Assembly (NCBI GenBank): GCA_001179505.1 | Contig: CDMY01000383.1 | Location: forward strand, 26,816-90,815 | Source: Vitrella brassicaformis CCMP3155 | Lineage: Eukaryota; Protista; Chromerida | Length of the DNA stretch: 64,000 bases | Direction of reading: 5' to 3' | In this document: one piece after another, positions 35,822 through 38,367 of the stretch | Numbering within the stretch: position 1 is the stretch's first letter | Layout of the letters: each line of letters opens with the position of its first letter | Position numbers and translations under genes: made by a program | Notes under the pieces: model-generated | The model's database searches: none | Told to the model about the DNA's origin: nothing | Seen by the model: only the letters and a program-made list of their open reading frames with translations

Positions 35822-38367
35822 ATGCATGGGCCACCTTTGCCTGTGCAGTTGCCGTCGACCCCGCCGAATGAACCGGCTCAGCCGAGCAGCCCCGCAGCTG
35901 CTGCTGCTGCCGCTGCCACGAGCCCATCCAGTGCAGAGGCCCGCCCCAGCCCCTTCAGCATCCTTTCCTGGGCCTCGTGCTGTACTGTCCGGTCTCGGGA
36001 GGAAGGCATGGACAGCTTGCACTCGTCCAGTGCCAGCGAGGGCAGAATTGCCTTCGACAGACAGAGCATCGTGCAAGAACAGAGCCTTGGAAGTGAGGGA
36101 GGGAGAAGAAGAGGGACATTCAGAACTGCTCGTCAGTGAGTGTATGTATCGCTTGTGCGTGCAGAGAATGAGTCGATTCAGGACTACTACGAGCTGACCA
36201 GCGAGCAGCTGGGCAAGGGCAGCTATGGAAGCGGTCAGTGCACGAGGGCTGGCATTTGTTCTCTTTATCCGTGGATGGACGCATGTGTGTTTGTTGTGGG
36301 TGCAGTGCAGAAGGCGAGGGACCGGCGGACAGGCGCTGTCCGTGCAGTGAAGATCATCAAGAAGTCCAGGATCGAGAACATCACCCGGCTCAAAAGGGAG
36401 ATCACTATCATGAAGAAACTCGACCACCCCAACATCATGTATGTCATGTCAGCAAAACGCTGCCCTGCCCCCACACTTACTGTGTATGGTACGCCTCAGA
36501 AAATTGTTTGAGGTGTTTGAGGATGATGAGCACATCTATCTGGTGCTGGAGCTGTGCACGGGTGGAGAGCTGTTCGCAAGAATCATCAAGAGCGGGCACG
36601 CACACATACACATACACACACATCCGATCTTAAGAGACTATCCCCAGCGAATGTCCGTGTTCCCTTTGCTGCAGCCACTTCAGCGAGTACCATTCCGCCG
36701 TGGTGATGAAGCAGGTCCTGTCGGCCATCTGGTACTGCCATGAGAATGGCATCATCCACAGGTAGGTGTGGAGACATGAATACACTTTGTCGTCAGCGGG
36801 GAGCATCGTTGATTGCTCCTGGTGGCCGTGTGGTCAGGGATTTGAAACCTGAGAATTTGCTGTATTCGACGGACAGCTCGACGTCGTCCATCAAGATCAT
36901 CGACTGGGGCTTCGCAGCCATGTGCTCCAAGGATCATGAGTTCTACTCGACGGTCGGGACGCCATACTACGTCGGTCAGCAACCAACCTAGACATAGGCA
37001 CACGGCCACAAGGTGGCCGAGGGTACATGTGTGTCTTGTGCAGCGCCTCAGGTGTTGATGGGCAAGTACGACAACAAGTGCGACCTGTGGAGCGCCGGTG
37101 TCATCCTGTACATACTGCTCGCCGGCTACCCCCCATTCCGTACGATGGGTGGAGGGATGCCTCTGAGAGATAAGAGCCGGCAGGCACATGTGTGTCTATG
37201 TCTTGGTCCCTGCAGACGGTAAGGACAATCAGGAGATCTTGAAGGAGGTCAAGAGCGGCAAGTATGACTTCGACCCGCGCTTCTGGGGGCACGTCAGCGA
37301 TAAGGCCAAAGACCTCGTCAAAAGGCTGCTAGTGTTCAGCCCACAGAAGAGGTACAACGCATAGCAGGCACTCTCGCACTCGTAAGGCCGATACATGCCA
37401 TCGTACGAGTGACTCCCGGTGTGCGTGTCTACAGGTGGATGGTGGAGACGCTCAAGAAGGGCGAAGCCAACACGGTGCAGCCGACGATCAACCCCCTGAT
37501 CGTGGAGAACTTCAAGGCCTTCCGCACACAGGCCGTCATGAAGCAGCTGGCCATCACAGTAATCGCATACCAGTTGTCGGAGAAGGAGATCCAGGACCTG
37601 CACAAGATCTTTGTCGCCCTCGACACCGACGGCGATGGGGTGCTCTCATCACAGGTGGGTATGGTTTGCCGGCCACTGATTGATATGTGTCTCTGGACAG
37701 ACACGTGGCGGTAATGTCATGCAGGAGTTGCGTGATGGGTTCATGCGGATGCGGCTCAACCTGCCACCCAACTTCGACCAGCTGGTCAGGGAAATAGACA
37801 CCAACCAGTCCGGCAAAATCGGTACTTGATTCGGGAGACACAGGAACCCCTTAGTGTCGATACGTCCCCTGCTCTCGTCTTGTGTCTTGCAGACTACACA
37901 GAGTTCCTGGCAGCGGGCATATCACAGCAGTATTATGACAAGGAATCGGCGTGTCGGGCCGCTTTCCGCGTGTTTGACCTCGACGGCGACGGCAAAATCA
38001 CCAAGTGAGCTAGTGCATGCCACCGGGTGTGGTGTCTCGCCCTCGGTAGAGATGCGGTGTGGATGTGTCAGGGAAGAGTTGAAGCAGGTTTTGGGGACGC
38101 ATTTCGCTGACAACTTCAACAACCGATCCATTGACGACATCATCAAAGAGGTAGGCTACCTACCCTGACTGACGAGTGTGTCTCACTCAGCACTCTCTCT
38201 CTGTCCTTCCATGTGTGTGTGTGTCGGTCGTGTCGTGTATGCAGGCTGATTCCAATAATGACGGATGTGTGGACTTTGACGAGTTTCTGGCCATGATGCG
38301 GGCCAGCAACAGTAGAAGGGTACACTCGTCCCTCTTCCCCGCACCGGTGAGGTCCAGACTCGTGTAG
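35822..38367 (+). CDS. Calcium-dependent protein kinase (apicomplexan CDPK2/3-like, APQ motif, 4 EF hands), about 13 exons; contains an in-frame TAG at 37362-37364
   Basis: [70 protein letters not shown]; EF hands [47 protein letters not shown]. Subdomain XI reads KRYNA*QALSHSW if the GTAAGG donor at 37382 is used. Confidence 0.95.

What the first reader, a model, noticed from the sequence alone, without database searches (positions are those of the whole stretch)
37340..37440. In-frame TAG inside an otherwise intact CDPK, just before the autoinhibitory/EF-hand half
Seen: the exon reads ...CAG AAG AGG TAC AAC GCA TAG CAG GCA CTC TCG CAC TC|gtaagg...ctacag|G TGG, giving KRYNA*QALSHSW (TAG at 37362-37364). 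Known: the CDPK subdomain XI consensus is R.TA(E/S)(Q/E)AL.HPW, and residues on both sides of the TAG match it. All other kinase and EF-hand motifs are intact, so there is no sign of decay. A weaker same-phase donor (GTACAA, 37352) would skip the TAG but delete the conserved AL.H helix. Inference: either UAG readthrough (UAG-C is the leaky context) or alternative 5' splice choice could switch between full Ca2+-regulated CDPK and a kinase-only product lacking junction and EF hands. A recent nonsense allele or a base-call error is equally possible.
Basis: partly seen in the sequence, partly recalled or inferred. Interest (0 to 1): 0.75.

Follow-up and report, generated by a model that had tools for sequence, protein, structure and literature searches.

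The report
Stop codon spliced out of kinase mRNA
In the alga Vitrella brassicaformis, a calcium-dependent protein kinase gene carries a real stop codon in a conserved stretch, but assembled mRNAs cut that 30-base stretch out with the next intron, so the cell makes a kinase ten residues short and needs no readthrough.

Summary
The TAG at 37362-37364 is real. Contigs assembled separately from four DNA read sets match the window exactly and carry it, so it is not a base-call or assembly error.

The TAG sits in frame in a stretch that reads like the end of the kinase domain (RYNA-stop-QALSHS-W). In 168 relatives the matching column holds a variable residue, most often Glu.

The mature mRNA does not contain the TAG. 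Three separate spliced transcript assemblies all join 37351 to 37435.

The open reading frame is 602 codons, from the ATG at 35553 to the TAG at 38365-38367. It encodes a complete kinase, junction and four EF hands, and lacks only ten residues (YNAxQALSHS) of the last kinase helix.

The gene is the Vitrella counterpart of the apicomplexan CDPK5 group.

Nothing supports readthrough, a changed genetic code or a kinase-only switch. The likeliest history is a recent nonsense change, probably GAG to TAG, in the tail of the exon. Messages spliced at a cryptic in-frame donor escape it. Whether the shortened kinase works, and whether any mRNA keeps the TAG, is untested.

The scan has noted other in-frame stops in this genome.

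The parts
35553..38367 (+). CDPK5-like calcium-dependent protein kinase gene. The CDS has 15 exons and 602 codons as spliced in the transcripts. Exons: 35553-35687, 35746-35790, 35849-36092, 36165-36233, 36306-36438, 36500-36595, 36675-36761, 36838-36974, 37044-37139, 37216-37351, 37435-37654, 37725-37821, 37893-38004, 38072-38150, 38245-38367.
   Evidence: Junctions come from blastn of transcript contigs L049-L051 against the window. The frame is open, with a single terminal stop, and P0181 is its exact C-terminal 489 residues. Pfam hits for kinase and EF-hand families are recorded for P0181.
37216..37351 (+). Exon 10 of 15 as actually spliced. It ends ...CAG AAG AG.
   Evidence: All three transcript contigs read ...CCCACAGAAGAG|GTGGATGGTGGAG....
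37352..37434 (+). Intron as spliced in the mRNA (83 nt, GT-AG). It contains the TAG.
37352..37381 (+). A 30-nt former exon tail, now removed with the intron. It still reads Y N A stop Q A L S H S in frame and is homologous to the xTAxxALxHP helix of relatives.
   Evidence: L and H of this motif are at least 90% conserved in alignment A1 and are missing from P0181.
37362..37364 (+). The in-frame TAG.
   Evidence: Present in four separately assembled DNA read sets.
37352..37357 (+). Upstream 5' splice site AG|GTACAA, the one used in the assembled transcripts.
   Evidence: Its PWM score is 0.4 bits, below all 27 other transcript-supported donors nearby.
37382..37387 (+). Ancestral 5' splice site TC|GTAAGG. 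Using it would give a 53-nt intron and keep the TAG in the mRNA.
   Evidence: The paralogue on contig C692 has its intron at the same codon position and phase (CAC CC|gtacgc...cag|G TGG). PWM score 1.7 bits. A 53-nt intron would be shorter than all 28 transcript-supported introns here, which span 58-94 nt.
37433..37434 (+). Shared 3' splice site AG.
36596..36674 (+). GC-AG intron within the kinase domain.
   Evidence: Transcript-supported.
38365..38367 (+). Terminal TAG stop of the gene.
   Evidence: The ORF on the transcript contigs ends here.

Best explanation
This is the Vitrella brassicaformis counterpart of the apicomplexan CDPK5 group. Shown: the genomic TAG is real. It lies in a 30-nt stretch that by homology was the end of exon 10. 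The ancestral donor position (37382) is shared with a paralogue. Assembled mRNAs from three RNA data sets instead use an in-frame donor 30 nt upstream, so the TAG leaves with the intron. The mRNA encodes a full kinase, junction and four-EF-hand protein that lacks ten residues of helix alpha-I. Inferred: a single-base nonsense change (probably GAG to TAG) arose recently in the exon tail. Messages spliced at the old donor carry a premature stop 17 nt before an exon junction, with four more junctions downstream, and are probably removed by nonsense-mediated decay. Messages spliced at the weak cryptic donor therefore dominate. The 30 nt are in effect being turned into intron. Whether the shortened kinase is active is unknown.
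For: DNA: four Logan contigs are 100% identical to the window and carry the TAG. RNA: P0181 (489 aa) is identical to all 12 exons tested but reads ...SPQKR|WMVETL.... It is one uninterrupted ORF on the spliced contigs Logan SRR646408, Logan ERR558152 and JGI 3300017148. Their alignment to the window gives the junction 37351|37435 and removes 14 introns of this gene. Homology of the removed 30 nt. The ancestral donor position is shared with paralogue C692. Everything else is intact: GKGSYG, HRDLKPEN, DWG and APQ motifs, four canonical EF loops by my reading of the translated model, and the N-terminal His-run plus FSLCTCC motif shared with coccidian CDPK5. The gene has no near-identical copy in the genome. 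CDPK5 grouping rests on 60-66% exon-wise identity to gregarine, coccidian and Cryptosporidium CDPK5 proteins.
Against: The donor in use is the weakest of the 28 local donors by PWM (0.4 bits, against 1.7 for the old donor). Its dominance is therefore not explained by site strength and rests on inferred decay of the other isoform or on the short 53-nt intron. Isoform ratios were not measured, because contigs show only the assembled path. The order of events (nonsense first or donor shift first) is not resolved. The deletion removes near-invariant L and H. AlphaFold gives pLDDT 51-65 for residues 281-300 of P0181, so the protein may be impaired.
Confidence: 0.8

Rival explanations
1. The donor shifted first and the TAG came later. 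The upstream donor took over for another reason, for example because the 53-nt intron is too short. The freed 30 nt then began to decay neutrally, and the TAG is simply the first hit.
For: A 53-nt intron would be shorter than all 28 transcript-supported introns nearby, which span 58-94 nt. The homologous intron in paralogue C692 is roughly twice as long (my reading of the sequence).
Against: Apart from the TAG, the 30 nt show no decay: nine sense codons, identical to P0262 on both sides. The upstream donor is the weakest of the 28, so it is unlikely to have displaced an intact site without help.
Confidence: 0.25
2. Regulated unproductive splicing. Both donors are used, and the cell shifts between the productive upstream-donor mRNA and a TAG-bearing mRNA destined for decay, to set kinase levels.
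For: Two weak, competing, same-phase donors lie 30 nt apart. The premature stop lies upstream of five exon junctions.
Against: No TAG-bearing spliced contig was found. The ORF expected downstream of the TAG in such an isoform (P0181:282-489) is not on record (weak evidence). A long-standing poison segment would not need to keep perfect protein homology.
Confidence: 0.12
3. Programmed UAG readthrough of an mRNA spliced at the downstream donor yields the full-length kinase.
For: UAG CAG GCA fits the loose yeast CARNBA motif (PMC4132726). The column tolerates many residues.
Against: The assembled mRNAs lack the TAG. CAGGCA fails CARYYA at position 4, and CAR-GCN is imposed by the Gln-Ala codons. 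There is no downstream structure. eRF1 has canonical GTS, TASNIKS and YLCDNKF motifs. The two paralogues read at this codon have AGA (C692) and Asp (C324); the C850 paralogue's product P0221 has Glu.
Confidence: 0.04
4. Base-call or assembly error, or a reassigned TAG codon.
For: None found.
Against: Four separately assembled DNA read sets agree. Stops inside 152 own-genome kinase matches are a mix of TGA, TAG and TAA, as expected from introns, and most matches have none. The gene itself ends at TAG. eRF1 is canonical.
Confidence: 0.01

Closest known systems
Apicomplexan CDPK5 group (for example Plasmodium CDPK5, and proteins named CDPK5 in Besnoitia, Cryptosporidium and Babesia)
   Same: Best exon-wise matches at 60-66% identity. 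Same architecture of kinase, junction and four EF hands. DWG in place of DFG. N-terminal His-run followed by an FSLCTKC-like motif.
   Different: Lacks ten residues (xTAxxALxHP) at the end of the kinase domain, which every aligned relative keeps. No tree was built, so one-to-one orthology is inferred from ranking and shared motifs.
Cryptic or alternative 5' splice-site use that removes a premature stop, and the intronization model in which decay of stop-bearing mRNA favours splicing out exon sequence (Catania and Lynch 2008, from my own knowledge)
   Same: A stop arises in ancestral exon sequence. An in-frame upstream donor removes it. The frame is preserved and the old donor position is still recognisable.
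   Different: The part played by mRNA decay and the order of events are inferred here, not shown. Only 30 nt of an exon, not a whole exon, has become intron.
Type I programmed readthrough (UAG-CARYYA, tobacco mosaic virus type)
   Same: UAG followed by CAG.
   Different: The hexamer is CAGGCA, with a purine at position 4. The stop is not in the assembled mRNA and is not conserved in any relative seen.

Membership tests
Calcium-dependent protein kinase (CDPK) | Ser/Thr kinase domain with catalytic motifs | tested here: met
   GKGSYG, HRDLKPEN, DWG and APQ are present. PF00069 is recorded for P0181. The best solved relatives are TgCDPK3 3hzt and 3dxn.
Calcium-dependent protein kinase (CDPK) | Junction plus four EF hands fused C-terminally in one polypeptide | tested here: met
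   One ORF on the transcript contigs. The four 12-residue loops have canonical D/N/S and E ligands, by my reading of the translated model.
Calcium-dependent protein kinase (CDPK) | Complete subdomain XI helix (xTAxxALxHPW) linking the kinase to the junction | tested here: not met
   The spliced product reads ...QKR|WMVETL. The L and H columns, at least 90% conserved in A1, are gaps in P0181.
CDPK5 group | Closest to named CDPK5 proteins; shared N-terminal His-run and FSLCTKC motif | tested here: met
   No phylogeny was run.
Programmed stop-codon readthrough | The stop is retained in the mature mRNA | tested here: not met
   Three transcript assemblies splice it out. Minor isoforms were not measurable.
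Programmed stop-codon readthrough | Stimulatory 3' context or structure | tested here: inconclusive
   Fails CARYYA and fits CARNBA. No stable downstream fold.
Programmed stop-codon readthrough | The stop is conserved in relatives | not testable with these tools
   No close relative was found. C692 has AGA and C324 has Asp at this codon; the C850 paralogue's product P0221 and more distant relatives also have sense residues.
Variant genetic code (TAG as sense) | In-frame TAGs across conserved genes; altered eRF1 | tested here: not met
Stop bypass by an upstream donor (intronization) | Ancestral exon sequence with a stop, removed in frame by a splice site that transcripts show in use | tested here: met
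Stop bypass by an upstream donor (intronization) | The stop-bearing isoform is removed by nonsense-mediated decay | not testable with these tools

The most novel reading that the evidence does not exclude
The two competing donors form a working switch. The cell varies the share of productive (upstream-donor) and TAG-bearing (downstream-donor, decayed or rarely read through) mRNA to tune the level of a CDPK5-type kinase. The ten-residue-shorter kinase stays calcium-regulated because the start of the junction helix (WMVETLKK) stands in for the lost helix.
Probability: 0.1. Interest if true: 0.5.

Novelty: new member of a known kind. Interest (0 to 1): 0.3.

Why it matters
This settles what looked like a recoding candidate. 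The stop is real in the DNA but absent from the assembled message, so no readthrough or unusual code is needed.

It is also a clean, recent-looking natural example of a premature stop at an exon end being bypassed by a cryptic in-frame donor. That is how exon sequence can turn into intron.

The gene is the counterpart of CDPK5, which from my own knowledge is an egress kinase in malaria parasites, and it sits in a free-living relative of those parasites. The shortened protein is a natural test of how much of helix alpha-I a CDPK needs.

The scan has flagged other in-frame stops in this genome. This case shows that each should be checked against transcripts before being read as recoding.

Tried and rejected
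- **Word searches with the genomic open frames** around the TAG exon (65 aa) and the next exon (136 aa) found nothing.
- **The big representative search** with the 73-aa exon gave only hits at or below 57% identity. It served to collect relatives.
- **An exact 24-mer scan** of metagenome contigs found nothing, and a protein-pattern scan there found one distant hit.
- **Histone genes as a check on stop-codon use** were uninformative because of introns.
- **An apparent in-frame TAA in the paralogue on C324** turned out to lie in an intron.
- **Look-ups for a 3'-UTR ORF and for the ORF expected after the TAG**, meant to find other isoforms, gave only the genomic contig or nothing.
- **A search for the run accessions in papers** found nothing, so I cannot say which culture or strain each run came from.
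- **Joined spliced model:** I did not send it to any search tool. Searches were exon by exon by reference, and the database protein P0181 then served as the spliced product. Joining in scripts was for frame checks only.

Full report
**Organism and gene.** The window is contig C383:26816-90815 of a 72,700,666-bp assembly in 1,064 contigs, with about 58% GC. By my own knowledge this fits Vitrella brassicaformis. A paralogue's product (P0221) is named as Vitrella brassicaformis CCMP3155 in the protein search, and earlier notes of this scan name the same organism.

The region 35553-38367 (+) holds a multi-exon calcium-dependent protein kinase gene. The exon before the TAG matches Toxoplasma CDPK3 and Cryptosporidium CDPK structures best. 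Exon by exon, the closest proteins are gregarine, coccidian and Cryptosporidium proteins of the CDPK5 group at 60-66% identity, ahead of the Vitrella paralogue P0221 at 57%. The N-terminus has a run of 13 His followed by YFSLCTCC, matching the HHHHHH...FFSLCTKC of coccidian CDPK5.

TAG is at 37362-37364, in frame. The sequence on both sides reads RYNA-stop-QALSHS and then W after the intron. Reading the exon through with X at the stop, 168 of 169 relatives align across the column. The column is variable (E 66, A 27, K 16, Q 15, D 12 and others). P0262 reads RYNAEQALSH, identical on both sides, so GAG is the likeliest ancestral codon. The nearest paralogues have Arg (AGA) on C692, Glu on C850 (in its product P0221) and Asp on C324. 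The gene has no near-identical second copy.

**The TAG is real DNA.** I looked up the intronless neighbouring ORF and the 58-aa genomic ORF that ends at the TAG. This returned Logan contigs from four runs: ERR558200, ERR558149, SRR505720 and SRR505714. All are unspliced, 100% identical to the window and cover the TAG. This removes base-call and assembler error. It does not exclude a minor second allele.

**The mRNA lacks the TAG.** Among the relatives returned by the word search was P0181 (489 aa, source JGI). It is 100% identical to all twelve exon translations tested, except that it reads ...LLVFSPQKR|WMVETLKK..., without YNA-stop-QALSHS.

P0181 is a single uninterrupted ORF on three contigs: Logan SRR646408 (9,642 nt), Logan ERR558152 (9,024 nt) and JGI 3300017148 Ga0186167_100210 (4,914 nt). 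Aligned to the window, these contigs lack all 14 introns of this gene, so they are spliced transcripts. All three join 37351 to 37435. The donor used is AG|GTACAA at 37352, and the intron is 37352-37434 (83 nt).

In the transcripts the frame runs on upstream to the ATG at 35553. This gives a 602-codon ORF with one terminal stop, the TAG at 38365-38367. With the other donor the frame would stop at codon 397 of 612.

**Which donor is ancestral.** The paralogue on C692 has its intron at exactly the position and phase of the 37382 donor (CAC CC|gtacgc...cag|G TGG ATT, reading ALQHPWI). The 30 nt between the two donors are clearly protein-like. The 37382 donor is therefore the old one, and use of 37352 is derived.

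I built a small matrix from the 27 other transcript-supported donors in this window. It scores the upstream donor at 0.4 bits, lower than all 27, and the old donor at 1.7 bits, lower than 26 of 27. Both are weak. The old donor would give a 53-nt intron, shorter than all 28 supported introns, which span 58-94 nt.

**Mechanism.** Shown: a real genomic stop, an ancestral exon tail, in-frame removal by an upstream donor in three RNA data sets, and an otherwise intact gene. Inferred: a recent single-base nonsense change, and loss of the stop-bearing isoform by nonsense-mediated decay. The stop lies 17 nt before the exon junction, with four more junctions downstream. The cryptic-donor isoform would then dominate. 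The reverse order (donor shift first, TAG as neutral decay) cannot be excluded.

**Rejected readings.**
- Genetic code change. Stops inside 152 own-genome kinase matches are a mix of TGA, TAG and TAA, and most matches have none. eRF1 carries canonical GTS, TASNIKS, YLCDNKF and GGQ. The gene itself ends at TAG.
- Programmed readthrough. CAGGCA fails CARYYA and fits only the loose CARNBA (PMC4132726). The Gln-Ala codons impose most of that fit. The 130 nt after the stop in the spliced frame fold no better than shuffles (z -1.2 and -1.7).
- A kinase-only product. The real product keeps the regulatory half. For TgCDPK1, removing that half does not give an active kinase (PMC5964469, citing Ingram 2015).

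**The shortened protein.** In a 40-sequence alignment, the L and H of AL.H are at least 90% conserved and are missing from P0181. AlphaFold2 on that alignment gives mean pLDDT 79.9. The kinase core up to residue 280 mostly scores about 90, residues 281-300 score 51-65 with only a four-residue helix (283-286), and the EF-hand half scores about 77-87. This does not show whether the protein is stable or active.

**Limits.**
- No read-level tool was available, so isoform ratios and allele fractions are unknown.
- The provenance of the runs could not be found in papers.
- A look-up for the ORF expected downstream of the TAG in a TAG-bearing mRNA found nothing, which is only weak negative evidence.
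- The joined spliced model was not sent to any search tool.

**Verdict.** This is an ordinary but tidy case of a premature stop bypassed by a cryptic donor. Earlier notes of this scan list other in-frame stops in the same genome, and two follow-ups called theirs ordinary premature stops.

Noticed in passing
window 32390-44215 (L049, L050): Single transcript contigs run through three adjacent genes: a minus-strand gene upstream (625-aa ORF), the CDPK on the plus strand, and a minus-strand gene downstream (ORF of at least 1,468 aa, including the 589-aa exon at 38942-40708). A neighbouring ORF on the genomic contig had a weak DNA_pol_phi hit. The CDPK and the downstream gene converge, with only about 570 nt between their stops, so their transcripts appear to overlap.
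   Followed up: partly
window 32390-34494: All three transcript contigs differ from the genome by one gap (99.95% identity) inside the upstream minus-strand gene. This could be an indel polymorphism or a one-base assembly error.
   Followed up: no
window 35553-35790: The N-terminus has a run of 13 histidines followed by YFSLCTCC. This is conserved as HHHHHH...FFSLCTKC in coccidian CDPK5 proteins and as ALCTCC in the Chromera relative P0051. It may be a metal-binding or acylation motif.
   Followed up: partly
window 36596-36674 and 40819-40881: Two of 28 transcript-supported introns are GC-AG. Intron lengths are tightly bounded at 58-94 nt.
   Followed up: partly
window 36880-36890 (DWG): The kinase has DWG in place of the usual DFG, as do the CDPK5-group relatives (the A1 consensus reads VIDWGFAA).
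   Followed up: no
same genome, other contigs (scan notes): Many other single in-frame stops in otherwise intact genes have been flagged in this genome, including a RING, MND1, a metallophosphoesterase, H1 and an HslU-like gene. Each should be checked against transcript contigs, as done here.
   Followed up: no
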